From contig JAHLWZ010000807.1 in assembly GCA_020536535.1 (NCBI GenBank), forward strand, positions 62,001-126,000: DNA of 64,000 nucleotides, read 5' to 3'. Below, in pieces: positions 1-59,669 of this stretch (the stretch's first letter is position 1; each line of letters opens with the position of its first letter). This DNA is from Pelomyxa schiedti (lineage: Eukaryota > Protista > Evosea). The translations under genes and the position numbers were made by a program. The notes under the pieces are model-generated. The model was not told the origin of the DNA. It saw only the letters and a program-made list of their open reading frames with translations, and did no database searches.

Positions 1-3000
1 GTAGAGTGATTCCATAAGATTTTCCGAGTGAATCAAAACAACTGCGCGACCGTCCGCCATACATGCTTTGATACTAATAACATCAATGGTGGCTAATTTG
101 AGTAGTGCAGAAGAACCTTTGTACGTTTTGGCAAACTACCAAGTCTGATTGGTCAGCAGGAAAATCACTCCCAAATAGTACGACAGCTTTATCTAAATTG
201 ACAATTTCTCTTTCAAAGAGTATTTGAAGTGCCGAGTCATTTCTTGTTAGAAGCTGGTGAGAGTTAAAGGAAAAGGATATATCCTTCCAGCCAGATAGTA
301 CCATTAAGTGGCGTGCATTCCTGTCTGCTAAGTTGGATTTTATCAATTCAAGAACCATGGCATGCTGTGAACCAAAGTGGGCAAGTGCTGTGTGATAGTC
401 CAGGCCCACACGGGAGAAAAACTGACGTAAAATTGCCGGAAGTTCCTCAGTACGACCACCTGGCAGAGTTTAATGACGAAAATATAAGGATGGAAAAATG
501 GCTCACCAAAGTTACGGCAAATACCATGAAGGAGTAAATCTGTCAGATTATGTAAAGGGTGGGAAAAGAAGAGGGAGCATACCAGCAGTTACTGACTGGT
601 CCAAATTTCGGTGCAAAAATTTAATTAGAGAATAAAAATCTCTCAATCCAAAGAAATCTCTTGTGTTCTGCTTTTTGTAGACATTATAGTAGGACTCGGC
701 CAGGGCATGCAAGCTCGCCATCAGATGTTGGCTTGAAACAATACCTTGGGCAGTGACTCTTAAATCTTCAACTGTTGGCTCTGGGCGAGTGAGGGTGACC
801 TAGGAGATGATGAAAAAAGTCTCAACATGGTAACAGGCATACAGCTCGATTCATCTTGGCAAGGTCAAGGCACCAACTGCGCCGTGTGTTAGAATATAGA
901 ATAGGATTCATTTAAACATACTTGCTTATACCAACAACAGCCACCTCGGGTTCTTCTAATAGTTTATGGAGGACTTTCAGGGGCAGATGTGGGCTTTGTT
1001 CTGCTAGCCCAACCTCATCCAAAAGAACAACTACACAAGTGTTTGATGTACTATTTTGATACTTAATTGCATGTTGGAATGTCTGCTCGATGCCTGATCG
1101 TGGTGAGAAATGGCTGGAAAAAAATCCTTGGTGATGTGTTACCTTGAGGAGTACTCAAAGGGCTACACTGATATGAAAACACCTCAACCGCAGGGAAATC
1201 ATGGAAAAATGCTCTTGCTGATGTTTTTCCGTTCAGATTAGCAGCAATAAGTTCCATTGCGAGGGACTTCGAGCTCCCTGGTTTTCCAACCACCTTGAAA
1301 GAAAATCGATTAAAAAATCAGTCAAGTTCAGAGGACAGCTACATATATGGGAATCCGATTAAGGATGCAGACAAGGATCATGAAAATATTTTCACTTAAG
1401 TATGATCAGATATAAGGTTCAACAGCATTGAAAGCATACCACAGTGCTTCGTTGAGAGCAATTCCTTCTCCTGGGCACATTTGTTTCACGTAAAATTGTT
1501 GCTCAGCATTGAGGAACTGTGTAAATTCGTTTCTTGCAAGGCAAATTTCCCGTGGACCCATTTTATGCATGACTGAGGCAACCAGCTCACGATACTCTGC
1601 ACGTTTATCACTGTTTTTGTAGTCCAGTTGGTATTTCCACAAGTTAAAAGAAATTCACCTGAGACGAGAATGATAACAGTGAGCAAGGGATAGAACAAGA
1701 GAGCGGGTGATAATTTCTGGAACAGAAAGTTCTCTTCCTTGAGAAACTTTTTGTTGAAACAGACTTCGTTGGAACCTAGAGGTTGTCAGAGGAAAATTAA
1801 ACAGTGAATTCAACCAGCTATAGAGTTTGATGCAGCGAGTTACATCTCGCAGACTAACATTCCCATTTGGTCCTAGGTCACCATTTCTAATGAAGGACTG
1901 TGAAGCTGAAATCTAAAGAACTCAGCAGAGAAAGAACCAAAGTTATAGTACCAGCTCAGAAAAGAGCCTACAAACAGGAGGTGCTCTAAATTCTATACTC
2001 TGACTTTCACGGAGACCCTCCGCAACAGGAAGTCTGTAGGCTTCTGGTTCATTGTAGGGGGGAGGTAACTCAAGTTCACGGTTGAGAATAGCAAAGATAT
2101 AAAGCTTCTCCACCTGAAAAAGTGTCAATAACTTTCAGAAACCAAGATGGGTGTAATTCACCTCAGGGTGGAGACTTCCATAGTCAAAGACATAGTCAAC
2201 CATTGATTCAGGAAGGGGGTGCACACGATACACAAGATTTTTCAAAGGGTCAGGAATGATAGCCGCATCCTTTTGGTGGTACTCATATACAAGTCCAGAT
2301 TCCATGTCCTTGTTTATACTTGAGAAAAGTTCATCAAGAACTGTGGAACCTTGGAAGAAGTTGACTTGGGCATAAGTCGGTATGGATTGCATGCAGCAAT
2401 AAATTTAATATTTGAAGGCAGTTTTTGACCACACATGAAGCCATCGCAAATCATGTTTTTGAATAAAGGCATACAGTTACAAGTATTGATTTCATCAAAG
2501 AAAACATAACTAGGACAATTAATTAAATTTGGGTACAACTTAGGCAGTACTGACACGCTTGTCTCTGTAGATACGGACAAAGCCTTTGGGATAGGTCCAG
2601 TATTCATAAAAGTGATGATATCCAAGTCCTCTATGCCACCATGTACATTGAGAACGTACAGAGACACTCTCAACAGTGCACACATGAAGCGAATAAGAGC
2701 AGTTTTTCCTAAATAAATGTTGGAATCGAGGCGAAGGCACTAAACTGGAGTACCACATCCAGTTTCACCCATAATTATTACGGGAATAGAAGATCTTAGA
2801 AATTGTTATTACAAAGGGATTGCAAAAAAAAAGTACCTAATGCGGAGCTGAATGGCAAGGATTTTCATTACATTCTAAACAACTGGGTTAGAAATCAAAC
2901 AAAATCCGCAGGGTTGCATGCATCAATTGTCAAAACGTAAGAGGGGTTCGGATCTGGGAAATCAGCTGAAATACCAAGAATGGTAGACAAAAGAATAAGG

Positions 3001-6000
3001 CCCTCTGGTCTGGTCAGCTTAGTGTAATCTGGAAATTTTTTTTTTTTGGCCGGGAAAGTTGGCATGCAACAAGTAATACCTTTATTGAAGTCGAATCTAG
3101 CAGTGAATTAAAAAAATTCTCAAGATTGCACACCATACCCATTGAGGGTCAAGACTTGGTTGAGTTCACGTGATAGAACTTGCTCCCCAATGTTGGGGTT
3201 AAGACTAATAATACCAATCCCAAAAGGTAGAACACCATAGCTCATATCAGGGCCAGCTTGATTAAAGAAAACATAACTATACAAAGTGAAAAATAAAGAT
3301 AGACCACAGGAAAGTACGGGTGAGGAGAGTCCTTCCACTGTCTCATGACACTAAAACGCTCAGCAATACTTTTCATCTCATTTAACGTGGTGTCCTCTGT
3401 TTCAACAGCCGCCACAGCTCCCTCAACACTTGAACGATCAGCTGAAACACTCCTCGTAGAGAAGTCATAGGACGTTTGTATACTACAAGCAAGTTAGAAT
3501 TGGGAACTGAACACTTTTCTCAAGTGACCTGAAGTTCACAACAAAGTTCTTGAACTGCGGACATCCAAGGGCACCTAAACAATGGTTGTTGGTACAGAAA
3601 CAAAAAAAGAAAAATAGGCAAACCTGCTACAGCCATATTGGTCAGCAAATCGTAGTAAGATATTTGGAAGAATTGATTCACCATGAACTTTGGCCTTTGA
3701 GATACAACAAATGAAATAATAATCCTAATCACCTTTACAAAATTGGTCCACAGTGTGTATGAAGCGTCTTTGCTTGGGACTGCATATTCACTCAATAGAT
3801 CAAAGCATACAGGCCCAGTAAGGTCTTCAACAGCATCGGGATGGAAGTCAGGGTCTTCTGGCTGTTTTGTTTTTAGATTTCTTTCTTTTCTTTTTCTTGT
3901 TTTTTTTTTTTTTTTTTTGAGACCTTGAAATTCAAAAACTGTTTTTCCTTGTACGCCTGCAGATATTTGCACACAAATTGAAGCTCATAGTTTCGCATGA
4001 AGCCAATCTCAAGGTCTAAAAAATTTTAGAGTAGCACGGTTTATATGAAGGAGACATTCAGGAGATCCAGACAGTGGCTTTAAATCGTAATTATATAGGT
4101 CCAGTGCATCCTTGGCAACAAGAGATACTTCTTGTGGAAGCATGGAGCAGAAGTGCAACCTATTCAAAGTTTGATATAGGATTTATGGGTACCAAATCAC
4201 CTCTTGAAAGTAGAATTCTGATAACTGTTGGCAATTTCTATATAAAAACCATCTGTTTCTAAGCGGTGATAAATGGCACCTGTTAGAGGATCTTGAACAG
4301 TGCCAACGATAAGAAGCTGGAACAGTAATGAGTTCAGCTCTTGTACTGTGAGAAAAAAAAAAAAAGAAGACATATTGGTACCGTTGGTTGCTGTTGGTCC
4401 AACATCTACATGGTAGATGGACCTGGAACCATCTGATTGGCTTATGGTTCCTGTTCCCTTAAACAGCTCGATGAAAGTATTGGCAGCAACGAAGCCATTG
4501 ATTGGGATATGCTTATATCTCGCACCCCACCTGGAAAAATTTATCACATTTAGAAGGTAGAAAAAATTCCATACTTGGATCCCTTTCTTTTCACTGCATG
4601 TGTCTTGCCAGCACCTGCGATATCAGACACGAAAACACATGTATCCATTGTGTAAGAAGTGACAATGTTGGCATATATTGTCTTAAGAGTCCCCTCATCA
4701 AGGGGACTCACTTGTAGCTTACGGTGTGCAAGGGCAGAGACAAGATGCTAAAGAAAATGAATTGCAAGAAGAAACCTGAAAACATACCTGCCCTTCTGCC
4801 TCGGTGCTAATAAATATAAGCTGAGCACAATGAGACATAGGAAGTCCTAAAACAAGTTCCACCACCTAGTTCATGATTGGTGATTGAGGAATCTTATGTG
4901 CGAAACCTTGCTCTGGAGTGTGTATGATAAGGCATTTATGTTGGAGACACAATATAGCCTGTTTGTGTGACCTTGGGATCTTGAGTAACACCATCTTAGA
5001 AGCAGGATTTCAATTTCTTCAAGTGATGTGTGCTCGTCACACAGTAGAATCTAAGGTTTGTTGGGTTAGACCATTTGGATGCCGCACTGGAGTGGGTTAC
5101 CTCAGATGGCTCTGGGATTCGGCTATTCTGAATGTAAAGTGAAAGCACAAGATCAAAAATTTTACTGGCTGGTGTAATGACCACATAGTATCCTTGCATC
5201 CCTTCCTCAAAAACATACCTGTAAAAGTCAGAAGATAAAAACAATTTGGGTTAGACCTTGAACCACTTGGGACAATTGACTGTCCAACATTTCTGGATAT
5301 TGGAGTGTGCTTGGTGAAAAGATTGAGTAAGTTCCCCAAACTTTCTAGTCTGCTTGTTGATGTTCCGCCACTTGTCCATCCTGAAACTGCTGCAGTAACT
5401 TCAGCAGGAGTAAGGGTAGAATTGACATAGGATAAAATGCTATTCAAGGAGGTAATATGTGAGGATTTTTGTGTGGGGGTCAAGGTTGCTGAATCAAGGT
5501 GGGCAATGATGTTGAGTAGTTGAGCCATGGTGAAGAAGTTGAGGTAGTAGAATTGACTCCGCGCAACTTTCACGATTTCTTGCCATTCCTATTACTATGA
5601 GAACCAAAAAAAAAAAGGTTAATATCTCTTACTGATAGGACTTGCTGTAGTTGTTCAGCACGTTTCTTTAGAATTGTCAGAGTTGAGCTTGCAACAAACT
5701 AAGAGTGATAAGAGGCTATTAAAGTGTTGAAGTGATGTACTGTTTCCCGATGAATGTGAAAATCAAAGTGCCCACTGTTATGCAGATCGGCAAGGGTTTT
5801 ATTTATCTCGACAACCAATCGAAGTTGCTCAACAAATTCTGACATCATAAGTGGTATCATCTCAGTTTCTTTTTGGACTGGAATTTCAGCAAGCATCTGT
5901 TTAAATAAGTTAGGTGCTCCAGAATGCATTTGACTTACTAATCTATTTCGTAAATCAGTCAATTCGTCTAAAGTCAATGATACTCGTTTCCCTGAGTCTT

Positions 6001-9000
6001 CTGGGTAGTCCATAATCATATCTACTTTGTGATTCTCGACGGCCCACACATACTGGCCTGTTGTCATCAATTTTCGCAGTGTAAAACATGCTTGCATTCC
6101 TTTGTCTGGTTAAAGGAGGATAAAAGGGCAAAAAAAAAAAAACCAGGGCTGCAAGTCCTTTCAGTGAATATTTTCATCAGAAATTCGAATTGTTCATTTG
6201 CTGTATGTAGGTGGCTGACTTCATCAGGTGATGTGATAACAATTTGCTTGAAGACAGTAAGGAATTCCTCCAATGAGCTGCAGGGGTTAGCAGCAAGCAT
6301 TTTTTTGGATGTCACCATACCTGAAAGGTCTCTTTGGGTACAGAATGGGGGAGAGTAAGTTTCGAGATGAAAGCAGTGAAGCAATCGCACTATAAAAGTT
6401 ATTTTAAGGCTCAGGGGAAGACAAACAACCGTAAAGCAATGGGATCATCTGTATTCGATTTAGAAATGGAAATCAAGCGCTGGAACTCTTCAGTGTTTGC
6501 ATGTCCCTGCAAGGGATTAGTACAGAAAGTGCTTTAGTGAGACAGACCAAAAACCAAGTGACTAGTTCAGGGCTAGAGGTGAACTCATCAAGGTACAATA
6601 ATTGCAAATCACCAAACCCCTCAAAAATCTTTTTTTTTTTTTTTTTTTTTCACCTTAGCATTTGTAGCGACCTCTAGAGTGCTTACTCTTTTTACTGTCT
6701 CAACATAGGTTGTTGTATCCCTGAGCACAAGTGTAGTCCATCGCGCTTCAAGGGCAGAATGCACTGTAGAAAGACTTGCACATAAAGCATCATTCTTAAA
6801 GTCTGTGGCAAACAATGCTTTGAGGAATCTGCAGAATGGAATAAGAACAGAACAAAGAGATGATAACAGCACTTGAGTGAATTTAGAAGCAAAGCAAGTC
6901 TCTTGCGATGGTCCTCGAGTATCCTGAAATTCTCCATAAACACAACATGCTTTTTTGCCCAGGAGGAGGACTCTTTCTCTGTTAATTGACCACCAGACTT
7001 CCCAAGGATCTGAAGCTCCCGTTGGAGATGTTTGGTCTCCACAGGTTTGAAGGTTGTCGTAAGATCTGTCAAGATAATTGATACACATATTTCTTTTACA
7101 TGTGCTTGATACCTGTGAAAAGAATCGTGTAGTTATCCACAGACTGGAATAACTCCCGCCAAAATTTTTTTACTGCTGGTATAAGATTACTTGCCACATA
7201 GTCTAGATCAATTTGTGGAGCTTGTACTTCATCCTTGCTGCCATTAAAACAAAAAAAAAAAGTTTGTGAAAGATATACTTGTGTGGGTGCATGGCCTAAA
7301 AGTGCAGCTGCAGCTGCGGGGGGCGGGGGTGGCGGCGGCGGCGGCGGCGGGATTGGAGTTGCTGGTATAGCAGAGCCCACACTATATTTATTGAGAACAT
7401 AAAAACAGGAGATGAAAGTACTTCTTTTTAGCCAGAGCCGACCAAAGAGACAGGAATAAATCAGAACCTCGGTGATCATAAATCCAGCTCAATAAAGGTG
7501 TTACAGGTAAAGAATTAAATAACCCCTTAGTGAATAAGTGGTGAAGTAATTCAGCACATGGGTACCTTGACTTCAGACAGGATAAGACTGTCCCAGTTTT
7601 GACGGATATTAATGAGATCCTCTGATAATTTCCCAGAATTCAAATTAATTGACATTCCAAAAATGTTGATGAAGCACTGTAGATGTGTAACAACGGTCTC
7701 AAACTCAGACATTGTTGAATACTTGTAGGTAACTCAGAAATGGGTTTTTTTGTATTTAGAAGAGTACCCTCTCTTGGAACAGTGCTGCTGGAATTTTGGG
7801 TATATCACAAGATGTTAAGAGCTCAGCAGAGGCTTCTCTACGTTCTCTCAATAGCTGCACCTCTAGTAAGGTACACCGTTCTGCCATGAAATTCTGGGCC
7901 ACTGTGAGTAATTATGAAATACTTATTAACTGTACATCATAAGTTGTTCTAAGTGTAGCCTTGGCCTGGGTAAGAAGTTCAATAGTTGGTACTTTCTCTG
8001 GGAAATGTGTCCGGTCATCAACTTTCAAAACCTTTTTGAAAAAAATTAGATGATACAACATTTGACTCAAGGTTACAACATGTAAAGCTCGGACCCAGAG
8101 TCTATGCCACTTCAACAGAGTAGCTAAGTCGGCGGTTGGTTTCTCACTTGAGACAGTGAAATCTTGTCTGAAATATTCAAAAAAGTTACCTATTGGCTAG
8201 ATGAAGGAGGCAGTATAGCAATGTATAAACAAGGGGGCAAGGCTTTTGTCTGTGGAGACTATCATAAAGTTCAACCTGACCTGGATCCAACAATCAGACA
8301 GTGTGATGGAAATTTCTGTTACCTTCTTCTGTTTGGGCAAAGCTGGAGACTGCTCTTCGTGCTGTTCAATGTGAAAAAGAATCTAATGAGATAGCTGGCG
8401 TACCTCTTTCCTCAAATATCCTCAAAACCTCTTCTTTAAAAGGAATTGCCAAAGCTTGTGGCAGATCAGAAACTAAAATAGATCTATCATGCAACATATT
8501 CAAAAGGCTGTAAAGTGGAATCAGTTGTGATTCAAGTGTCTGACAGCCTACGTTCGAAGTGCTCGAGTTATGTGCTCCAAGTGTTTTGAAAAGACATCAA
8601 TTTTGCAAACATTATTAAATATTTGAAGGAGATTTGGAAGCTCAACAGAAACCTAGGTTCCTGAATTAGCGAACCATTAGCCATGGTTGACGAACTTTTC
8701 GCTCCGTCGTTGTGTGGTCGAATGTTACAGTACGGGTTTCTACAATAAAAGCACTTGTCAGCCATCTTTGAATGGCTTGGCTCAGCCTCAAGGATAGTTC
8801 ATCTGTGACAACAGAAAGGGTATTGATGTATTGTAAAACGGGAATGGCCTTAAGGGGGGTAAGTTAAATTTGTTGGAGTTCTGGCAGCTTACTTTCATAA
8901 TGTCAGTTATTTGAGTGAATTCATTGCTCTCAAGAGCTGCACAGACTATATTACAGGCATGCTGTGGAGGACAATTTTGAATTAACCTAAGTTCCTTGTT

Positions 9001-11169
9001 TAATGGTAATTTTATCCCTTCAATACATACTGTAGGAAGACATTGAGAGATTTTGCTTGTGATTTAGCTGATCTTGGCCATTCAAAAGTCCTCATGCGGG
9101 ATGTTAATGTATCCATGAAGACCTCAATCATAGGTGCAGAAGGATCAAGAACTAGTGGTTCAACTTCCATGAGCTGGAATAAGCAGTGCATACTGGGTAA
9201 AATGAGAAAATCCTCGATGGCATTGTGAAGAACCTGGGGGCAATTCTAATCATCGAGCACAATATCGGAAGCTTGCTTGTAATAAGAGGTGGTTGACAGA
9301 GGATGAGGTTTCCTTCGTGAAGTGTTTGCATTTCTGTCAGAAAGGCCTTATTTTTTTCCCTTCTAACCATCACAGCGGGTTCCACATAAACCACACCATA
9401 ATGTTTCCCAGCAACCTGAGAAACAACTTCAACAAGTGGAACAAGGGAAAGCCATAAAAACGATCCACATTTGTGCTCTTCCTGAGCAATAGACCGAATT
9501 CCCTTTATTATCCATTCCGCTTGGTCCTTTGTCACCAACTTTGAAATTTCTTAGATAGTTTCTCTAAGGGGAATAATACCTGGGAAAAGTCATACTCTGG
9601 GCTATACAATGAACTATGTGATAGCATCGCAATGAATTCTGGGGGGAAACAAGAAACCATTTTCATTGGAACCCAAGCACCATTAGACCATGTGGATCCA
9701 GTACTCCACCCGCTTCCTGACTCCCACCCAGAACTCCACCCCCCTGTTCCCCATCCAGAGCTCCAACCTGTACTTCTTCCACTAGAAAAATGTTACAAAT
9801 AAAGAAAAATCAGCTTAATGTGAAACCTGTAGGTATCTGTGCCCGATCCAGAGGTATAGACACCGCCACCTGTGTAGGCACCATTTCCCCATGTACTACC
9901 ACCAGTTCCCCAGGATCCTCCTGTTCCCCATGACCATGCCGCTGGCTTCCATACCCTTGAACGTATTACATGTACAACTTCAGCAGAACCTGGCCGCCAG
10001 TTGGAATTTTCTGACTATTTGGGAATTGTACCCCGAGCAAAGCAAAGCATCAAAGCGGCAAGTGGGGTCCACCTTCCTTTCATAGCTTTTATTTTCTCTT
10101 CAGCCCAGTCTTCAACTTCGCGTTGCCACAACTACAAAAAAGGGACAAAATGTTAATTAATTAGTAAGAAAGTAGGTTTGCGTACGTCATCTCGTTCAAC
10201 CAAGCAAGTGAAAGCACAAGAATAACGTTGCAAGAAAATACGGGCATTGGATTCACTGGGGTTCTGGTCAAACTGGTTCCACACCATATTGAGGAATCCC
10301 AAGGCAGCTTCCTTGTTATTCTTAAAGGTGAAATGGTAAAATGAAAGGCCACCTTTCGGTATGCTGAATTCCCACCCCAATAGAATGACCACCCATATGA
10401 TGGTGAGGCTTTGTAAATTGCATAAACTTCGGTTGTTTCTGCGGTTATCTCCCTTTGGTAGTATAAGTAAGATTTTGGCACTGCAACACTTTCACCTGGC
10501 ATCACCACTCTCAAGTTTGACATTGGTTCTGCTTTCAATAACAAACTTGTAATCAAATATTGACCCCTGCCACAAAGTTACCCAAGAACCATTGACGGGG
10601 GATGGTGTCAAACTTTTTGGTGTTTCACAGGGAATGAAATGGAGCCAGACCACAAGCGAAGGTCAGAAGGGTCTCTCTCCAAGTAAGACAAAATTGATGC
10701 AGCAGTAATAACCGGGGTTGTTGTTGTATACTGCATGCCATACATGCCAGCTGCATACTGCGTGACAGGGCGAGTATCTTCCCTCACTCCCACTCTGCCA
10801 TCTTCAAAATTGCCATAAGTTATACACAATCTCAGTAAGCAAACATCCAGGATAGTGATATGTTGAGGTTTTTTTTATTTTTTTTTTTTTAAAAAGCTTT
10901 TTTGTACCAGCGCCAAGTTCATCAGTAGGAACGAAAACGTGAAATGTCACCAGCACGTGATCTTTAACAACGACATCAGTTTGTTGGCTGGGCCTGGTTG
11001 CAGTTGCATTTGACGTCACCGAGGATGTTGGAATTGGCGGCGGGGGATACGACGGAGGCGGCACGGCTGCCCTGGTGGTGGCGCCAGGCACCACCTCAGT
11101 TATGGGAGGAGGAGGCTGAGATTGAGGGGGCCCGACGCCAACTCCTGAGGGTGGGGTTACTTGAGACAT
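1..11169 (-). CDS. RNF213: RNF213/mysterin-like giant AAA+ ATPase / E3 ligase (N-terminal region plus AAA core; 3' end lies beyond position 1), multi-exon
   Basis: Spliced exons give RNF213 signatures. Walker A is LRSSIPVIIMGETGCG|KTALIRF (~2690-2800). Walker B is VFFDEINT, followed by IIAACNPYR-like 'FIAACNPYRL' and 'LVYRVHPLPESMVDYVFDYGSL'. A second Walker A is 'VGKPGSSKSL...FSYQCSPLSTPQG', with Walker B 'VVLLDEVGLAEQSPHLPLKVLHKLL' (~960-1035). Also 'RDFFGLRDFYSLIK' and 'VLFGSDFPADQ'. Probable ATG at 11169 (MSQVTPPSG). Confidence 0.9.
9673..9951 (-). repeat. Coding Gly/Ser/Trp-rich GW/WG repeat tract inside the RNF213-like gene (split by a 45-nt intron at 9782-9826)
   Basis: Translation: WKPAAWSWGTGGSWGTGGSTWGNGAYTGGGVYTSGSGTDTY|SGRSTGWSSGWGTGGWSSGWESGSGWSTGSTWSNGAW. 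It has 12 Trp in ~78 aa, 8 of them in GW or WG context. Confidence 0.8.
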
Positions 11170-13905: not shown

Positions 13906-16083
13906 TTATTTTGTCTTTTTGTTTGTCCAGTAGCCAATGGGCAGGGTTGTGGAACTTGGGCGAATCGTCAGAGTTCCATCAGAGTTCGAGGTTAGAGTTC
14001 CGTAGATAGTGCCACTGTTGGAAAGGGTAGTGATGAGACTCTCGGCAGTTACAACCCAAGTGGAGCTGGTATCCACGGTCACAGTGATATTGTTGTACCC
14101 GTTGTAGTAGAGCTTGTTGGCCACTTGGGCAAGGCTAAAGTACTCATTTATCGTGAAGTATGTGTTCTGGTAGGAAACCCAGGATTCACTTGCTTTTACC
14201 TATGTGGCTCTGAGTGCGATGTGAAGTTTTCCTTATTGAGCATACTTGGGCGTTTTTAATTGCTAAGCTTCCTTCGTATGTAACATGAATTGTGGCAGTT
14301 GCAGCAATAGCAGCATTCAATGTTGCCCCGTTGGAGAGTGTTACTTCCAGTGAAGGAGCTTTCTGCCCATAGTAACCAGCACCGTGGTAGATATCACCAG
14401 TGACTGTAACGGCGTCAAGAGTGAGTGAGGCTTTGTTGTCAGATCCCGCGGAAGTTGGAGCCGGCCAACCAGCTGCCTCGGAATGGAAAGTGTTGAAGGT
14501 GATAGGACTTAGATTAGAAGTTCCTGTTGTAGTATCATCGTTGTCCATTACCTGCTCCCACTGGTCAGAAATATGAATGTGTGTAAAGATTTATTCCACC
14601 TGCATAAGAATGCCATTGCCAGAAGATATAACGGAGCCAGAGGTGACACTGTACGAAGCAGAACAGCCCGTCATTACCACGAAGGTTGTCCACCCAGTTG
14701 TAACCACAGTTCCTCTTTCAATTACAACTGATGAATTGAATTCATGCGCGGCGAATCCAAAGGTGTCAGACAGAAGTGTGCTGACTTTGCTTTCCGTTGC
14801 TGTGTAAGTCTTTGAAGCAGATCCATAGGCGTCGTAAAGAACATAAGTTTCTCCTGCTACGAGGTCTGTCCATGTGCACTTACCACCAGTTAATACAGCG
14901 CACTGTGTGCCAACGCTTAAGGTTACTCCGTACCAATGAGTTATTGCATCTCCAATGAGGTATGTGCCATAGCCAGAACGGTTTGTATAGGGATTTGGGG
15001 TTTGAAAAGGAACAGTCCCGTCTGAATTGGCCTGTTGCATAGGATAATCTGCCCCCAAGAGTGTAATCTTAGTATTTACGACATTCATCACGGGGTTTTC
15101 TGGAAGGTCGATTGACAGAACTGCCCACTGTGCAGCAGCCACTTCTGAATCTATCATATGCAGTGTTGGATAATCTCCTAGCAACAATACAGTTCGACTA
15201 GTCCCCATGACACCTTAACATTTGGTTGGTGTGCACAACGAAAGAAGGGAAAGAATAAAAACCTAGAGTCCAGGGAGCAGCGACCATAGAAGATTCTCCT
15301 GCATTGTTTACATAATCGCTGTATAAGGTTCCACCCCAGCTGGTAATCTTGCTTTTTTCTACAGAAACTATGCCCCCTGAGTCCACAAATATAGCAGATT
15401 TCGCAACTCCTCGCGTATAGATTGTAGTGTTTGTTATGGAGAGCTTTGTTCCTCCAAACACAGCTATTCCTGCTCCGAGACCAGTGAAGTCACTCGTATC
15501 CTTTCCGTCAGCAGTTGTCACGTCTTCAATTACCGCATTGGAAAGGCTGTAAGCGGCTCCAGAATTCAATATGACAGAGTTGAAACCACTAAACTCGGAG
15601 TAGAGGTCGACGGTAGAGCTTCGCTTGATACAATCAAAAACAGACTTGGCTTTCACACACCCGGTGGAATCAAAGTAGTAACCAGGGCGGTATGCATAAA
15701 CATCCCTTGTCGCTGACTGCTCCAACTCAGTAAGGGAGCCAATTGTGCCAACTGCTGAAGTAGTCACACTTGTTACTTTGCCGGTTGTACAAGCAGAGCC
15801 ATCAGTGGAGCTGATTGGAACTCCGCTGCATAGATATGTGATATATGATGTAGGTGGTGTATATAAGGTGGAATTTGTTCTTTCTGGCACCAAGGAAGAA
15901 TTATAATGCCGTCTCACCTGGAAAGTGAGGTTGGTCTGTCACTAAGAAATGAAACCATTATTACGTGGCAATGAGAGGGGAAAATACATGTGAGGAGGAC
16001 TCTGAGAGAAAGCATAGAGACAACAGAAAGAACAAGGAAAGGTGAATGTTGTGAATGACAGCTCTCGCCACGACGTGTCTCAT
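13906..16083 (-). CDS. Secreted bacterial-type right-handed beta-helix-like protein of unknown function, multi-exon
   Basis: Signal-peptide-like start MRHVVARAVIHNIHLSLFFLLSLCFLSESS. Long T/S/G/V-rich beta-strand exons: 'SDFTGLGAGIAVFGGTKLSITNTTIYTRGVAKSAIFVDSGG', 'MVAAPWTLG|GTSRTVLLLG', 'AAAQWAVLSID', 'NPYTNRSGYGTYLIGDA', 'DTSSTWVVTAESLITTL'. The product assignment comes from pattern recall, not a search. Confidence 0.7.
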
Positions 16084-16853: not shown

Positions 16854-19800
16854 TCAAACAATAATACATAGGGCCAAAACGAATAGTAACAGAATGGGGA
16901 GTGTGGAAGCAGCCTTTGGGGCAGAGTTGGAATTGGAGCCAGACAGTACCACTACATCCACAACAATGCAGGAATCTGGGTCAGTGTGCTGTGTGACCTT
17001 TTTGGTAATTGTAATTACTTTTGTATGCTTGTTGTGAATTAACATACATTGCCTTGGTATAGATCGCTGTTCTCATCAATAACAATATCCTCCATAATGA
17101 GTATTACTTCATCTGTTGTGAAATCCACACAAATAATTGTGAAATTGACTGAGACATCAGTCATTATCACAGTTATTGCTGATGTGCCAGTTTCCCTCTT
17201 CTCACCGGTGCATGAGGAATCCATTCTCAATGAAATAGAGTTCACATAAACATAGTCTGAGCTAGTTCCCAAAGCAGAAGCTATGTCTTGGGAAAACTGA
17301 GAACCAAAGGTAGATGGCAAGGTGGATATGCACTCTGTATTATGTTAGCGTTCCGTGGGGTGGCCAAAACTGCTCACCAGAGAAGACCAATTGAAGGCCA
17401 AAGGTGACTCTTGGTTCATCTGAGAGCGTTACATTCCCTCAAGAAAGACACTAGTAAATACCTGGTTGCTTTACACTGCTACACACGTCAGACCAAATCA
17501 ATGCACTAGTGCCGGGGAAACACCCCCGGGCACAGTCCCGCGATGGTGGCGGAATGCCGGGTCCATAGCAAACAGTGTCTATATAGCATGAGCCGGCGCT
17601 CACACAAGAGCAAACTGCCGCGGGTTTTGGGTCAATCCTGTTACAAATACAATTGGTAGGAACTGTAGCACAATCGACGCAAGCGTCAGTTAAGGTACTT
17701 TTTGTTGGTAAGTAAATTGTGAAAGGGTGTTACAGGAACAATACCAGTACGGAATCGTAGAAAGCTTGCTTGTTTCCCCGTACACATAGGTTGCTTCTAG
17801 ATTTCTATTGTTACAGGTTAATTGTTATTAAGCAGTAGTTGAATTAAAAAATTACAGGGTTTGTAAGTAACCAAGAGCGGACAAAGAAGAAGGGATTGTG
17901 CCTCCAATATCAGTATTACGAAGTGAACTGCACAAGTAAAGTTACTTTACTTGCTTAAGTGAAGAGAAATACAGATCACGCAATGATGATAAGTTCCCAA
18001 AAGTTTCTGGTATTGTGCCAGAAATATCGTTCTGCTGGAGATGACTAGAAAAATCAGCCAAAGTTATAATTGTATGTTGGTTACAGAATTTGTAGTTTAC
18101 TCATGTTCCCAATCTCCAAGGGTATTGTGCCTTGCAGACTATTGTCATTGAGATAAAGTGCTGTTAGTGATGACAAAGAGGAAAAGCAGGCAGGTATTCC
18201 TCCTGTGATATTGTTTACTGAGACATCTCTAACACTGTAAGACTAAACAATAATTTTTCAAAAATACAGGTTCTGTAGCATTTGAAGCAAGCAGAATGTT
18301 GTAGGTATTTGGCTATCAAAGTGATTCCCTCCAAGGTATCTTCAGAAAAATTAGGGAAAGAAAAGGAAATGCAATACTACAAAGAATTAATCTGTGTAAG
18401 GCTAGACAAAGCTGGCAGAGAGCCAGAAAATGAGTTTTCTCCAAGATTTCTTGTTCAATTAAATAAAAAAAGAAAAAAAAATAGCTATTTACATGTATGT
18501 GAGGCTTGACATTGAAGAGAGGGATGCAGGGATTGTGCCACGAATCTCGTTTTGAAAAATAGACCTTTGTTGCATGAGCACGAATGGGGGACTAAAGTCC
18601 TTACAGGGTAACTAGATTTGACAGGTTTGAGATAGATTCTGGCAGGCTGGTCAATCCATTATAATCGATTACTCTTTTGTTTTTTTTTTGTTTGGAAAAA
18701 AATCACTGGAGTGAAAATCGTACAAGGTTCTCAGCCCTGTGTTCACCACAGTGACGTTAGGAAATGGCCCAGAGAACGAGTTCGTGCTAAGGAGACTGAA
18801 AAAGAATTAAAAAGAGGGATAGAGGTCTTTTCAGAGAAACATTTCATTTGCAGGAAGACGAAACAGGCTGGAAGGTATAGTTCCCGTAAAGTTATTTTCC
18901 CGCAAGTCTCTGGCACACCTTAGCGCATACATGATGTTGTGAAGATAACATACAAAAACCAAAGGCTTTGTGCATTTCCAAAGGATGTTGGGATTGAACC
19001 ATGGATTTTGTTTGATTGCAAATCTCTGAAAAAAAAAATGGTTACATTGCCAGTGCATTAGAATGGACATGCGTACAGATCAATGAGTGACCCAATAAAA
19101 TGGAAATCTGGCATGGTTCCTGTTATCGCGTTGTGACACAAAGAACTACTCAATAATGAGCTTTCAAACGTATTGAACAACATACATGCGCTGAAGGAAC
19201 GGAAGGGGCGCCAGTGTATCGAGTGTACCTCCAATCCAGTTGTCATTGAGAGCTCTAGAGATTATCAGTAATAAAATTGATTTCAATGTGCACACAATGT
19301 CCGTAGGTTCACAAGCTGTGATAACGTAGTAGGAATTGTACCCGAAAGAGCACTGTTACTTATCCGCCTTTGTAAGAGACTGCATTTAGAACAAGGAGAA
19401 AACGAAGTTGGCCATACAGCAGTTGAAGGGTGGTGAGATTCCCCAGGGAGTCTGGAAGCGGACCAGTAATGCCACAAGCAAAAAAGACCCTGACAAGAAT
19501 GAGAGGAGTTCCAAAACCAGAGGGAATCAGACATTTCTGTGATGTTTCCAAAAGCTGACACACATGACGGCAGTGATCCCACCATGGGTTCATAAGATAA
19601 CTCCCTAAATTAAACACGCAGGGGTGTGAGTTTCATTACATAATCATTCTGAAATAATTCAACTCCATAAGCAACACATTATTTAGAACAGAATAGAATA
19701 GAATACACACAGTTTCATCAGATGATAGTCACTCCAACAAGTCACCCCTTTTAGGGGCATATCACACGCAGTTGAAAATGTACAGGGATTAACAGAAACA

Positions 19801-20445: not shown

Positions 20446-23400
20446 TTAAGTACCTTTCATGAGAGCACTGCATATAGCACAAGGAATGTCATTGTCTGTA
20501 GTGGATGGAATGAAGTTGTGTGATTTGTTTTCATTGGTATGGGCTGTGGCTGCTGTAATAGTTGCTGTGTTGCTGTGGGAATGCACGTGGGCGTGGACGT
20601 GGCTGTGGCTGTGAGTGCGGCTGTGACTGTGACTGTGACTATTGCTGCGGTTGCGTGTTGTGCCCTGCAAAAGCACCGAGGATGAAGCGCTTGGTCGTAG
20701 CTTTTGGAACGCTTCGTGAGTTGGGGATGTGTCTTGATCACTGAGAGCTCCGGGATCCATATCCTCGGACTTGGCGCTTGCGGTGGAGTTGCGCCTTCCG
20801 CTTGTTTTTGATCCGCGTTCACTAGAAGATGCATCTTCAGTTGAACGCGGGGTGACTCTTGGTGATTCCCTTTCCATTTCCGGTATGTTCAGCGCTGGAA
20901 TATTTAGTGGAGGGCCACCCTCTTTGTCTCTCCGTTGTTTTCTTTCTTCTCTTGCTTTCTTTCTCTCTTCTCTTGACTTCCTTAGTTCTCCAGTTGGTCG
21001 AAATTCCCCTTCGACGTCTTGGCCTGGGCTTCTGCTCTCAAATGATTCCTGCAGTCCCTCAACTCTCTCTACTTGTCCAGTACTGAGTCTTCTTTCAGAT
21101 CCCCCAATGGCTCTTTCAATTTCTTCTGCTTTTCTTCTAGCATCTTCTAGGCGGTTGTGCTCCCCTGTCATATCTTTGCCTGATGTGGAGAGCGGATTGT
21201 GTATATCCAAAGTTGACTCGTCTTTGTGTTCAGTTTTTATAATGTCAATTTCGTGCTTTGAGTGACTTCGGCTCCTTTTTTCCTTTTTAAGTTCCGGTTC
21301 AGGGGAAGTATCCGGTGTTCCATGAGCCTCGGGAGGGACAAACGCAGGGACAGGATTTAATTCTCGGTCATCACCGTCTTTATGGGTTTCAGTAGCGCAC
21401 GAAGGGTCACTCTTCCTGTCACTGGGTGGAGGTGTTTTCTTCCTCGAGAGTAGTAAAAACGAACCTCCTCCAACGGAAGTTTGGTTCCTAGACTTCGAAC
21501 TACTGAGGCTAGGAGAGCTTTGAGACGGAGTTAACTGGGAGATGTGTGACCGAGAAAGCTTCGGGGATTGGGTCCCAGTCTGTTCTGGCGGGGTATCGGT
21601 GTTCCTGGGGGATAGGGAGGAGCTAGTTGATGGCGGTGGTGCCAGAGAGTTTGAAGGTGGTGCTGCTGGGCCTGATACCGACATACTTTTACTGTGCCCA
21701 TGTCGAAGTGAAAGAAATGTTGCAGCACGACGAACTTGTGATAATGACGAAGGTGATGAAGCAGAGGGTGATGTAGGCGAACTAGAAAGTGATGCATAGC
21801 TAAGACTAGGGGCTGTGAGCCCATTGAGTAATGCTTGGGCCTCAGGACTTAGTGGGAGGGGTTGTTTTACATGCTCACGTGGGGAGGTAGGCGGGGATAT
21901 TCGAAATCGGATGCCGCTATCCTCCTTTACACAAGAAGTAATGTTTTCGGCAGAAGGTGCTCTCCGTCGAGTGGGTGTTTCAACTGCAGCCACTACTGGG
22001 GCGGATTTAACATCCTCTTCTGGAAAAGCTTGTATACTTTATTAGGAGTAAGATAAGGGGAGGGGCTAACGTGGGGGTTCTCCAAAGGCATAGCAGCCAA
22101 TTCCAGATTTGGGATGAACGAATGTATAAAACAAAAGTCTTCTGTATGTCACCAAAAAAGTAACAGTACGGAAAGTGTTACCTTGAAAAATAAAACATCC
22201 TCGTAATAAAATAGCCTTTGAGAGAGATTGTCTTCACGGAAGTAAAGTTCACTGGGTGCCAAATGATAATTGAACCTTCTTGGTCACATGAACACATATA
22301 ACTACGGAGAACAATGTAATAGGCTTCTTTTAATCAGTGGGACTACCTTTCACATGGTGTAAGCCAGGTGATGTCCGCATCATGGCCTACAAGAGTAGCA
22401 ACTATATTCTACAAAGAGTCAATAGGCACTGTAAACAACTCCCTTACTTTTTTATCGCAATCAAACACTAATATCTTTGCTTTACTAGCTGCCCATACAC
22501 GCTTATTAAGATAAATGCATGATGAAAACCGAGCGGCAATATCTGCCAATACTATAGACAAAGAGCAGGGAGGAAGTAAAAATAACCTGTTATCGATCTC
22601 TGAGTAGTCATAGTTAAAGCATCCAGAATAACAACTTTATTCCAACATCCGACCCATACAGTGTCGTCACAGTCACATAAAACCATGAAGTTAATGTTTA
22701 CGGTTTTGTCAAATGTGACACGGTTAACAACTTCACGCGTCTGAGGTACGTTATTTGGCATTCACATGGTTTTGAGATACCGAAGGATCAACTGAAACAA
22801 TTGTATATTCAGTTGGGCAGGAACTCCAAACTCGTATGGTGTCCTTTGCCGTTACTAACAGAAGTTGGGCTATAGATTGTTTGAACCCATGGAGAGGAAG
22901 TTCTTCTTTTTTTGTCATAGTCTGAAAGAGATGAATTTGAAAAGAGTGAAAATGAGGCGGACCTGTAAGTCGAATACTATTACAATACCCAATTCAGAAC
23001 TGGCCCAAAGTTCGTCCTTTACAAAAATTATGCTATATATCCTTGTTTTATGTTCCAAATCTAGATTTGGCCCTAGGGAAGAGCCTTTACTTTTTGTTAA
23101 GTGCCGCACAGTCCCATCTGCAAAAGAAAACTGGAAGAAATTAGTACAAAGACAAATAGAGGGAAACAACCCACAATGCACCCGCATTTTCAGTGATGCA
23201 CCAGGACTTAGCTTCATCATAGACTTGCCACAAAGATGAAACCTCTGGCAACTCGGGAAGCTCAACACCTAGTTTGGCAGAAAGATTCAGTACCCTGTGA
23301 GAAGGTTTAAAACGAACGTGGTTCCTCTTCTTTTTCTTCCATCGGTCTGTGAGGCAGCTCCAGCATGTCCTCAAGCTCAGAAGTCAGGCTTTCAGCTGAA

Positions 23401-36987: not shown

Positions 36988-38301
<1,314 letters not shown>

Positions 38302-59225: not shown

Positions 59226-59669
59226 CACACACCAATGATACTTTGGTTTTTTCTTTTTTTTTTTTTTTTTCTTTCCTTCCCTCTTCCACGTTTCGTAGTC
59301 AATCAGCGAAATGTCAAAGCACAAAGTGATCGGTTTCGTCCTGCCCGAGTGTTACCACTGAGGTACAGAACCTGAAATTTCCCCTGCCAAAGTACACTGT
59401 TGTTGGCACATTTTTCCGTAGACAACAGGTACAGGGGTCGTCCAGTTAACAAAAGATCCACAAGGAAGATTGGGAACCCAAGATGGAACGAAGCACACGT
59501 CAACTGTCAAGTGTAATTTTATTTCCTACCGAGTGTAAGTCTGTTTCACTTAACCGTGCTAAGTTCCCATGCCGCAGAAATTACCACATTTCCCAAATCA
59601 CAATTCCGTGTACTGTTTTCCAAACAAAACAACGCAACAACAAAAACCCCAAACGAGCCTCCAGGGCAA

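What the first reader, a model, noticed from the sequence alone, without database searches (positions are those of the whole stretch)
9673..9951. GW/WG (Argonaute-hook-like) repeat insert inside an RNF213-like E3 ligase
Seen: in the N-terminal stalk of the RNF213-like protein, two in-frame exons encode ~78 aa with 12 Trp, 8 in GW/WG context, in a G/S/T background (WSWGTGGSWGTGGSTWG...GWSSGWGTGGWSSGWESGSGW). The frame joins helical coding sequence on both sides through a 42-nt upstream intron and a 45-nt internal intron. Established: GW/WG tracts are the Argonaute-binding platforms of GW182/TNRC6, Tas3, NRPE1 and SPT5L. Animal RNF213 is an antimicrobial sensor and E3 ligase, and I know of no such tract in it. 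Inference: this could couple a cell-autonomous-immunity AAA+/E3 machine to Argonaute or small-RNA complexes, or act as a Trp-based glycan-binding or condensate module. It is my best candidate for an undescribed system in this window.
Basis: partly seen in the sequence, partly recalled or inferred. Interest (0 to 1): 0.85.

Follow-up and report, generated by a model that had tools for sequence, protein, structure and literature searches.

The report
Trp-rich disordered loop in amoebal RNF213
The Trp/Gly/Ser/Thr tract is real, coding and under selection, but it is the enlarged, tryptophan-based version of a floppy aromatic-rich surface loop found next to the sugar-binding domain in many protist relatives of the immune E3 ligase RNF213, and nothing yet links it to Argonaute.

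Summary
Observation confirmed exactly. On the minus strand, 9951..9673 encodes 78 aa with 12 Trp (8 next to Gly) in a G/S/T background, split by a 45-nt intron and joined upstream by a 42-nt intron. The window is Pelomyxa schiedti (Archamoebae), and the gene is RNF213-like. Two rival models (a 393-nt intron; an alternative frame that my own codon-trained parser preferred) are rejected. A 31%-identical metagenomic orthologue carries SSGWSSGWGSSSGWGWG... at the same position in one uninterrupted ORF, and the BLASTP alignment crosses the Pelomyxa splice junction in the GW frame. Repeat units within the tract also differ almost only at third codon positions (10 of 12, P = 5e-4). AlphaFold (pLDDT 77.6) folds the flanking helices confidently and leaves only the tract disordered. 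The tract lies about 100 residues after a CBM20 domain, the region under positive selection in primate RNF213. Across relatives the same loop is low-complexity and variable in length: Trp-based in the Pelomyxa clade (12, 8, 4, 3 and 2 W) and Tyr-based in the sister clade. The tract is nearly uncharged. This favours a generic aromatic "sticker" loop for surface contact or self-association over an Argonaute hook, which stays possible but untested (about 0.1).

The parts
9673..9951 (-). Core Trp tract (78 aa, residues ~291-368 of the predicted protein), interrupted by intron 2
   Evidence: 12 W, 8 next to G; G+S+T make up 51 of 78 residues; charged fraction 0.05.
9827..9989 (-). Tract exon 1 (163 nt): GSAEVVHVIRSRV + WKPAAWSWGTGGSWGTGGSTWGNGAYTGGGVYTSGSGTDTY
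   Evidence: Its GSAEVV start matches GSANEVV (L002), GSSAEL (L009) and GSSAEI (P0165). GC is 0.53 against 0.36 for introns. The repeated peptide SWGTGGS occurs twice with only synonymous differences.
9782..9826 (-). Intron 2 (45 nt, GT..AG, in-frame TAA, 24% GC)
   Evidence: The BLASTP alignment to the intron-less orthologue P0003 crosses this junction in frame.
9580..9781 (-). Tract exon 2 (202 nt): SGRSTGWSSGWGTGGWSSGWESGSGWSTGSTWSNGAW + VPMKMVSCFPPEFIAMLSHSSLYSPEYDFSQ
   Evidence: Its tail IAMLSHSSLYSPEYDF matches L009 IAKLSHPSLYDGDLEF. GWSSGW occurs twice with synonymous-only differences.
9990..10031 (-). Intron 1 (42 nt, GT..AG, in-frame TAG)
9539..9579 (-). Intron 3 (41 nt, GT..AG)
10032..10131 (-). 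Upstream stalk-helix exon (LWQREVEDWAEEKIKAMKGRWTPLAALMLCFAR-G)
   Evidence: Aligns with the helix before the loop in L006, L009, L014, P0165 and others. It corresponds to H42-63 of the AF2 model.
9234..9538 (-). Downstream conserved helical stalk exon (…WIIKGIRSIAQEEHKCGSFLWLSLVP…EP..M…IRIAP)
   Evidence: This exon was the query and is 30-34% identical to P0002 and P0003. The region is folded at pLDDT 80-92 in the AF2 model.
10496..10975 (-). CBM20-like domain exons (residues ~65-200; exons about 10908-10975, 10614-10801 and 10496-10566)
   Evidence: Scores 47 bits against a profile of the relatives' CBM20 regions; pairwise E = 1e-5 to 9e-9. The L006 copy passes the Pfam CBM_20 cutoff (25.4 vs 23.3).
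10908..11169 (-). First coding exon, with the predicted start codon (ATG at 11169) and a Pro-rich N-terminus
   Evidence: The choice of start codon is inferred, not verified.
1..9233 (-). Rest of the RNF213-like gene (stalk, linker, first AAA modules), which runs off the left end of the window
   Evidence: Collinear tblastn hits to the L001 RNF213-like gene. The Walker B exon 915-1154 and exon 2317-2739 hit PDB RNF213.

Best explanation
The tract is a translated, intrinsically disordered, almost uncharged Trp/Gly/Ser/Thr loop. It is inserted between two helices of the N-terminal stalk of the Pelomyxa schiedti RNF213-like E3 ligase, about 100 residues after its CBM20 domain. It is the largest known version of a loop found at this exact position throughout one branch of protist RNF213-like proteins. 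That loop is always low-complexity, always carries aromatic residues among small residues, and varies in length. The aromatic residue is Trp in the Pelomyxa clade and Tyr in the sister clade. SHOWN: the coding status, the frame, the position, the predicted disorder, the clade distribution, and selection on the peptide repeat. INFERRED: I propose it acts as a multivalent aromatic 'sticker-and-spacer' element at the target-recognition end of the molecule. Many weak Trp contacts would add avidity, either to a target surface (glycan or lipid, alongside CBM20) or between neighbouring ligase molecules as they assemble a coat. It would not act as a specific docking motif for one partner.
For: Coding status and frame:
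- One BLASTP HSP (E = 4e-9) to the intron-less orthologue P0003 runs through the tract and across the intron-2 junction.
- Repeated peptides occur only in the GW frame, and 10 of 12 DNA mismatches between unit copies fall at third codon positions (P = 5e-4), plus one TCC/AGT serine switch.
- The tract exons are 53% GC, against 36 +/- 6% for 26 clean introns of 36-81 nt.

Disorder:
- In the AF2 model of P0003 built on 18 rows (pLDDT 77.6, pTM 0.74), the only segment below pLDDT 50 is residues 66-102, which is the tract.

Conserved position and variable content:
- Searches place the loop at the same site in each relative.
- Loop W counts are 12, 8, 4, 3 and 2 in Pelomyxa, L002, L006, L009 and P0165. 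Loops in P0128, P0129, P0133 and P0184 are Tyr/Gly-rich.

Clade structure:
- The W-loop proteins group at 97/92 and are split from the Y-loop proteins by a 98/95 branch.

Location:
- Human CBM20 (residues 378-515) plus the adjacent stalk is the positive-selection hotspot and the proposed ligand-recognition surface. RNF213 forms cooperative coats on pathogens (PMC11549300).

Composition:
- Charged fraction 0.05, 15 of 78 residues aromatic, mean hydropathy -0.74.
Against: - No functional data exist for any protist RNF213-like protein.
- The sticker mechanism is inferred from composition, position and analogy (FG-nucleoporin and FUS-type low-complexity domains, recalled from general knowledge and not tested here).
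- CBM20 point mutants of human RNF213 did not affect recruitment (PMC11549300), so even the neighbouring domain's role is unproven.
- The segment could not be mapped onto a solved RNF213 stalk by sequence profile or by fold.
- Splicing in Pelomyxa is inferred from homology, not from RNA reads.
- Loop length varies from about 35 to 100 aa, which is also what a merely tolerated linker would show.
Confidence: 0.45

Rival explanations
1. Argonaute hook: the GW/WG tract binds the Trp pockets of a PIWI domain and recruits Argonaute-small-RNA complexes to the E3 ligase, or the ligase to Argonaute.
For: - Composition matches the core definition: many W flanked by G/S/T in a disordered, low-hydropathy, hypervariable region (definition from PMC4615383).
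- The L002 tract SSGWSSGWGSSSGWGWG looks strongly GW182-like.
- Argonautes are functional in the related archamoebid Entamoeba, and no GW partner has been found there (PMC8546589), so the niche is open.
- Trp is kept as Trp across four sampled lineages of the clade.
Against: - The homologous loop in the sister subfamily uses Tyr, which cannot fill Ago Trp pockets. The loop therefore predates any Ago role.
- The tract lacks the high net charge described for Ago-binding regions (charged fraction 0.05, net charge 0).
- Clade members L009 and P0165 have only 2-3 W.
- No RNF213-Argonaute link appears in the searched literature.
- No Argonaute gene is in the window, and the rest of the genome could not be searched.
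Confidence: 0.1
2. Tolerated low-complexity expansion: the loop is only a flexible linker at a permissive site. The Trp-rich composition in Pelomyxa is a by-product of repeat expansion with no function of its own.
For: Loop length and content vary greatly between relatives, from about 35 to 100 aa. The first half of the Pelomyxa tract has no counterpart in L002. Most RNF213-like proteins lack any such tract. The loop is predicted to be disordered.
Against: There is no DNA tandem repeat. Repeat units have diverged at synonymous sites while keeping identical peptides, which indicates purifying selection on the peptide. Trp, normally the rarest residue, recurs at this site in at least five lineages. 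Aromatic residues among small residues are conserved across both subfamilies.
Confidence: 0.3
3. Not translated as described: the tract is intronic (a single 393-nt intron, 10031..9639) or is read in the alternative E/Q/V-rich frame.
For: Both alternatives keep the downstream frame. The acceptor TTTCCCCCCAG at 9639 is plausible. My codon-trained parser chose the alternative frame. Splice signals in this genome are weak.
Against: - Homology to P0003 runs through the tract in the GW frame and across the junction.
- The conserved GSAEVV and IAMLSHSSLY motifs would be lost or disconnected.
- Peptide repeats and the third-position mismatch bias exist only in the GW frame.
- A 393-nt intron at 49% GC would be about five times longer than any of the 26 clean introns, and its GC content is exon-like.
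Confidence: 0.03

Closest known systems
Human/mouse RNF213 N-terminal region (CBM20 domain at residues 378-515 plus adjacent stalk; PDB 8S24; PMC11549300)
   Same: Same family: the AAA exons match solved RNF213 and the relatives carry the RZ finger. Same order of CBM20 followed by helical stalk. The tract sits in the part of the protein that is the positive-selection hotspot and proposed recognition surface in primates.
   Different: No Trp-rich tract occurs in any metazoan RNF213-like protein sampled. The protist stalk segment could not be aligned to the solved structures by profile or by fold, so the exact equivalent human residues are unknown.
GW/WG Argonaute-binding domains (GW182/TNRC6, NRPE1, SPT5L, Tas3)
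   Same: Multiple Trp flanked by Gly/Ser/Thr in a hypervariable, disordered, low-hydropathy region (PMC4615383).
   Different: The tract is nearly uncharged. Within each block the Trp are only 2-7 residues apart. The tract is a loop inside a folded helical arm, not a long free region. The homologous loops in the sister clade are Tyr-based. No Argonaute interaction is known or tested.
Aromatic sticker / small-residue spacer low-complexity domains (FG-nucleoporin repeats; FUS-type [G/S]Y[G/S] domains). Comparison from general knowledge, not tested here.
   Same: Regularly spaced aromatic residues in an uncharged G/S/T(/N) background and predicted disorder. Interchange of aromatic type (W or Y) between lineages fits a generic sticker role.
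   Different: It is much shorter (about 35-100 aa against hundreds), uses Trp rather than Phe or Tyr in this clade, and is embedded in an enzyme's stalk. No phase-separation or cohesion data exist.

Membership tests
RNF213 family (giant AAA+/RZ-finger E3 ligases) | Dynein-like AAA core with RNF213-type Walker A/B modules | tested here: met
   Exons 2317-2739 and 915-1154 hit solved RNF213 at human residues 2522-2569 and 2839-2906 (E = 5e-5 and 8e-8). GKPGSSKS and VVVLLDEVGLAE are present. The gene is collinear with the L001 RNF213-like gene.
RNF213 family (giant AAA+/RZ-finger E3 ligases) | RZ-type zinc finger / E3 module at the C-terminus | not testable with these tools
   The gene runs off the left end of the window before the E3 module. 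The orthologue-bearing contig L001 has PF20173 ZnF_RZ-type downstream, as do most relatives.
RNF213 family (giant AAA+/RZ-finger E3 ligases) | CBM20 domain in the N-terminal region, ahead of the stalk | tested here: met
   The L006 relative passes the Pfam CBM_20 cutoff (25.4 vs 23.3). The Pelomyxa segment scores 47 bits against a profile of the relatives' CBM20 regions. Single Pelomyxa exons alone give no Pfam hit.
GW/WG Argonaute-hook regions | Several Trp flanked by Gly or small polar residues | tested here: met
   12 W in 78 aa, 8 next to G; G+S+T make up 65%.
GW/WG Argonaute-hook regions | Embedded in an intrinsically disordered, hypervariable low-complexity region | tested here: met
   In the AF2 model of orthologue P0003 only the tract is below pLDDT 50. 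Loop length and sequence vary between relatives. For Pelomyxa itself this is inferred by homology.
GW/WG Argonaute-hook regions | Low hydropathy together with high net charge (PMC4615383) | tested here: not met
   Hydropathy is -0.74 (met), but the charged fraction is 0.05 and net charge per residue is 0.00.
GW/WG Argonaute-hook regions | Trp specifically required and conserved as Trp among homologues | tested here: inconclusive
   Trp is kept within the Pelomyxa clade (12, 8, 4, 3 and 2 W), but the homologous loop is Tyr-based in the sister clade.
GW/WG Argonaute-hook regions | W-dependent physical binding to the PIWI-domain Trp pockets of a co-occurring Argonaute | not testable with these tools
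   No Argonaute is in the window and the P. schiedti proteome could not be queried. Argonautes exist in the related Entamoeba (PMC8546589).
Aromatic sticker/spacer low-complexity domains (FG-repeat or FUS-LC type) | Regularly spaced aromatic residues in an uncharged small-residue spacer, disordered | tested here: met
   15 of 78 residues are aromatic, W spacing is 2-7 residues within each block, the charged fraction is 0.05, and the tract is disordered in the AF2 model.
Aromatic sticker/spacer low-complexity domains (FG-repeat or FUS-LC type) | Aromatic-dependent self-association, or multivalent binding to a surface or receptor | not testable with these tools
   This needs biochemistry.

The most novel reading that the evidence does not exclude
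In Archamoebae and their uncultured relatives, the Trp tract is a true Argonaute hook that evolved from an ancestral Tyr/Gly loop. It would physically couple an RNF213-type AAA+/E3 immune machine to Argonaute-small-RNA complexes, giving a direct ubiquitin-RNAi link in cell-autonomous defence and supplying the missing GW partner of archamoebid Argonautes.
Probability: 0.08. Interest if true: 0.85.

Novelty: new variant of a known kind. Interest (0 to 1): 0.45.

Why it matters
How RNF213 recognises very different targets (bacteria, parasite vacuoles, lipid droplets) is an open question. In primates, adaptive change concentrates on the CBM20 domain and the neighbouring stalk (PMC11549300). This work shows that protist relatives carry, in that same region, a conserved insertion point holding a disordered aromatic-rich loop whose chemistry (Trp or Tyr) and length change by lineage. 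That gives a concrete, mutable element to test for roles in surface recognition or coat assembly. The host is also of interest, because P. schiedti lives permanently with intracellular bacteria and archaea (PMC10579272). There is a practical point too: ordinary codon-based gene finders are likely to mis-frame this tract, so it may be missing from existing annotations.

Tried and rejected
- Pfam on single exons: no hits. This is uninformative because the exons are short.
- Tandem Repeats Finder on the tract: nothing, so it is not a microsatellite.
- My first DP gene parser over-spliced. The second chose the alternative frame across the tract. I rejected that frame on homology and codon-position evidence.
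- The 393-nt single-intron model was rejected on length, GC content and loss of conserved motifs.
- Exhaustive phmmer with the downstream exon gave only 3 hits, one spurious (P0001, a repeat protein). The window's own annotated protein was not recovered.
- Word-indexed search with P0003 returned only itself.
- The first metagenome scan found nothing. The second gave 51 RNF213-like loci, but only L009/L010 and L014 retain the homologous N-arm.
- Profile search of the stalk segment against PDB sequences: no hit.
- Foldseek of the good AF2 model against the PDB: only generic helical repeats, best E = 0.2, so there is no mapping onto human RNF213.
- The first AF2 run, on 3 rows, was poor (pLDDT 48) and was superseded.
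- Literature: no paper links RNF213 with Amoebozoa or mechanistically with Argonaute, and none covers Mastigamoeba Argonaute.
- C-mannosylation-type WxxW motifs and kinesin W-acidic motifs were considered and dropped. The protein is cytosolic by family, and the tract lacks acidic flanks.
- I could not obtain RNA-seq or transcript evidence, the NCBI gene model, or the identity of the organisms behind L001-L014 and P0165.
Full report
**1. What is in the sequence**

The finding lies on the minus strand. In one frame the region reads ...LMLCFARG | SAEVVHVIRSRVWKPAAWSWGTGGSWGTGGSTWGNGAYTGGGVYTSGSGTDTY | SGRSTGWSSGWGTGGWSSGWESGSGWSTGSTWSNGAWVPMKMVSCFPPEFIAMLSHSSLYSPEYDFSQ | LVTKDQAEW.... The bars are GT..AG introns of 42 nt (10031..9990), 45 nt (9826..9782) and 41 nt (9579..9539). 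The two introns whose length is a multiple of three each contain an in-frame stop.

The core tract, 9951..9673, is 78 aa with 12 Trp, 8 of them next to Gly, and with G 24, S 16 and T 11. Tandem Repeats Finder reports no DNA repeat. No other place in the window shows this combination in any frame.

**2. Organism and gene**

An actin exon at 37303-38301 is 100% identical to "actin, cytoplasmic 2 [Pelomyxa schiedti]" and 91% identical to P. palustris actin. The window therefore comes from this anaerobic archamoebid. Its genome is intron-dense (7.43 introns per gene, 98.4% GT-AG; PMC8887013).

The gene is RNF213-like:
- Exon 2317-2739 matches solved RNF213 at human residues 2522-2569, and exon 915-1154 matches 2839-2906.
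- The whole minus-strand stretch from about 11169 to position 1 is collinear with an intron-poor metagenomic RNF213-like gene, L001, which carries AAA_5 and RZ-finger ORFs.

My N-terminal model starts at the ATG at 11169. It has a Pro-rich head, a CBM20-like domain at residues ~65-200 and the tract at residues 291-368.

**3. Is the tract really translated in this frame?**

Two rival models had to be excluded. A single 393-nt intron (10031..9639, ending in the acceptor TTTCCCCCCAG) also keeps the frame. My own codon-trained dynamic-programming parser chose an alternative E/Q/V-rich frame across the tract. Splice signals here are too weak to decide. Three independent lines favour the GW frame.

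(a) Homology. An exhaustive search with the downstream exon found P0003, a 256-aa protein encoded in one uninterrupted ORF of the RNF213-like gene on contigs L001-L005. It carries SSGWSSGWGSSSGWGWGNSGGSSWSGKWW directly upstream of the conserved helices. A single BLASTP alignment (E = 4e-9, composition-corrected, 31% identity over 185 columns) runs from the tract into the helical domain. It pairs Pelomyxa YTSGSGTDTY|SGRSTGWSSGWG with YSDGS-TDAATSTSSGWSSGWG, so it crosses the predicted intron-2 junction in frame. The exon-1 start GSAEVV matches GSANEVV, GSSAEL and GSSAEI in relatives. The exon-2 tail IAMLSHSSLYSPEYDF matches IAKLSHPSLYDGDLEF.

(b) Codon pattern. Repeated peptides (SWGTGGS twice, GWSSGW twice, WGTGG three times) exist only in the GW frame. 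Between unit copies, 10 of 12 DNA mismatches fall on third codon positions (P = 5e-4), and one serine is encoded by TCC in one copy and AGT in the other. This also indicates purifying selection on the peptide, not recent slippage.

(c) Composition. The tract exons are 53% GC, against 36 +/- 6% for 26 clean introns of 36-81 nt (median 44). The 45-nt spacer is 24% GC. A 393-nt intron at 49% GC would be an outlier on both counts.

Direct RNA evidence could not be obtained with these tools.

**4. Structure**

With an 18-row alignment, AlphaFold2 models P0003 at mean pLDDT 77.6 and pTM 0.74. The only segment below pLDDT 50 is residues 66-102, the tract, drawn as coil between helices 42-63 and 107-118. 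An earlier 3-row run was poor. The tract is therefore a disordered loop within a folded helical stalk segment. Neither a sequence profile nor Foldseek could map this segment onto solved RNF213.

**5. Comparative anatomy of the loop**

A second metagenome scan and a search seeded with a 2,932-aa ORF gave 51 loci and 120 RNF213-like proteins from across eukaryotes. None of the 120, including the cnidarian and amphioxus proteins, has a comparable Trp tract in the N-arm.

About a dozen sequences retain the homologous stalk helices. All share the scaffold helix - G..SS.E/GS(S)AE - variable low-complexity loop - (P.P.PWC) - helix - GSF.WL..P. The loop contents fall into two groups:
- Trp-based: Pelomyxa (12 W), L002 (8), L006 (4), L009 (3, GGGGGGGWW) and P0165 (2, KWGNSTNSNFFW).
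- Tyr/Gly-based: P0128 (TTYSMGGATNYGNGGYY), P0129, P0133 and P0184, with mixed content in L014 and Thecamonas P0126.

In a maximum-likelihood tree of the AAA region, the Trp-loop proteins group together (97/92). A 98/95 branch separates them from the Tyr-loop proteins, and in the unrooted tree they lie next to metazoan RNF213. The Pelomyxa tract is therefore the extreme, Trp-based state of an older aromatic/small-residue loop. Its first half (WKPAAW...GGGV) has no counterpart in L002.

**6. Context from the literature**

Human RNF213 has a CBM20 domain at residues 378-515. That domain and the adjacent stalk hold a cluster of 23 positively selected sites in simians and are proposed as the ligand-recognition surface. 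RNF213 forms cooperative coats on bacteria and parasite vacuoles. A deletion removing CBM20 and the adjacent stalk abolishes recruitment, though with aggregation, and CBM20 point mutants had no effect (PMC11549300).

Ago-binding W motifs are described as multiple Trp in hypervariable, disordered regions of low hydropathy and high net charge (PMC4615383). Entamoeba, a related archamoebid, has functional Argonautes, and no GW182-type partner was found there (PMC8546589). No paper links RNF213 mechanistically to Argonaute. P. schiedti is an obligate consortium with intracellular bacteria and archaea (PMC10579272).

**7. Interpretation**

Shown:
- The tract is a translated, selected, disordered Trp-rich loop at a conserved insertion point beside CBM20.
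- It is restricted to one clade and is largest in Pelomyxa.

Inferred: its function. Four observations guide the inference. The aromatic type switches between Trp and Tyr across clades. The loop is nearly uncharged (charged fraction 0.05). It lies in the region thought to contact targets. RNF213 action is cooperative.

From these I favour a multivalent aromatic sticker-and-spacer element that adds avidity for a target surface (glycan or lipid, alongside CBM20) and/or for neighbouring ligase molecules (confidence about 0.45).

The rivals rank as follows:
- A purely tolerated linker is the main rival (0.3). The synonymous-only divergence of the repeat units and the recurrence of Trp argue against it.
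- The Argonaute-hook reading fits on composition. It is weakened by the Tyr-based homologues and the lack of charge, and no supporting data exist. It remains possible as a clade-specific gain (about 0.1).
- Non-translation is unlikely (0.03).

**8. Verdict**

This is a new variant of a known kind: an RNF213-family ligase with a previously undescribed aromatic low-complexity loop. Interest is moderate. It offers a testable handle on RNF213 target recognition and a caution for annotation, but it is not yet evidence for a new system.

Noticed in passing
window 9681-9955 (minus): A codon-usage-trained exon parser prefers an alternative E/Q/V-rich frame across the tract. Automated annotations of this gene may therefore mis-frame or skip the Trp tract.
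   Followed up: yes
window ~10360-10407 (minus); L006:119-640; L009:685-2766; P0165 N-terminus: A second aromatic/Gly motif sits directly after the CBM20 domain in the same clade: Pelomyxa SPSYGWSFYWGGNSAY, L006 RYLSGWGNN, P0165 GGGMSGGGMTGGGMTGGAYSGWSSNYYYN and L009 GGYGGYGGYGGGYGYGGYGGYGY. The recognition end of the protein thus carries two aromatic low-complexity elements.
   Followed up: partly
AAA-region tree of RNF213-like proteins: The Trp-loop clade (Pelomyxa, L001, L009, P0165) is adjacent to metazoan RNF213 (cnidarian, amphioxus). A 98/95 branch separates it from the Thecamonas, dinoflagellate and heterolobosean groups. The tree is unrooted, so direction is unknown.
   Followed up: partly
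window ~3800-3900 and ~7300-7380 (minus), same gene: There is a Lys-rich stretch (KKKKKKTRKRKERNLKTKQPEDPD) and a poly-Pro/poly-Ala stretch in open frames of the RNF213-like gene. Whether each is exonic was not resolved.
   Followed up: no
window 14189-15938 (minus): Three adjacent long ORFs rich in T/S/G/V. One has a weak right-handed beta-helix match (Pfam Beta_helix, E = 0.0025, below the cutoff). This may be an adhesin-like or carbohydrate-active protein.
   Followed up: partly
window ~17900-19600 and ~23300-24170 (minus): A gene with plant-type leucine-rich repeats (LRR_1/LRR_8 hits) and a protein kinase gene lie upstream of the RNF213-like gene.
   Followed up: partly
window 20449-22038 (minus): A 530-aa Ser/Pro-rich open frame with no Pfam match, in a region of unusual composition (GC 0.49, AT skew -0.225).
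   Followed up: no
window 30704-32185 (+), 37303-38301 (+), 59556-60800 (+): RCC1-repeat + Sec7 domain exon, actin (100% identical to P. schiedti actin) and an NPC1 middle-luminal-domain exon.
   Followed up: partly
organism level: P. schiedti lives as an obligate consortium with intracellular bacteria and methanogenic archaea (PMC10579272), yet keeps an RNF213-type gene, a family that in mammals coats cytosolic bacteria. Whether the ligase tolerates, polices or ignores the symbionts is unknown.
   Followed up: no
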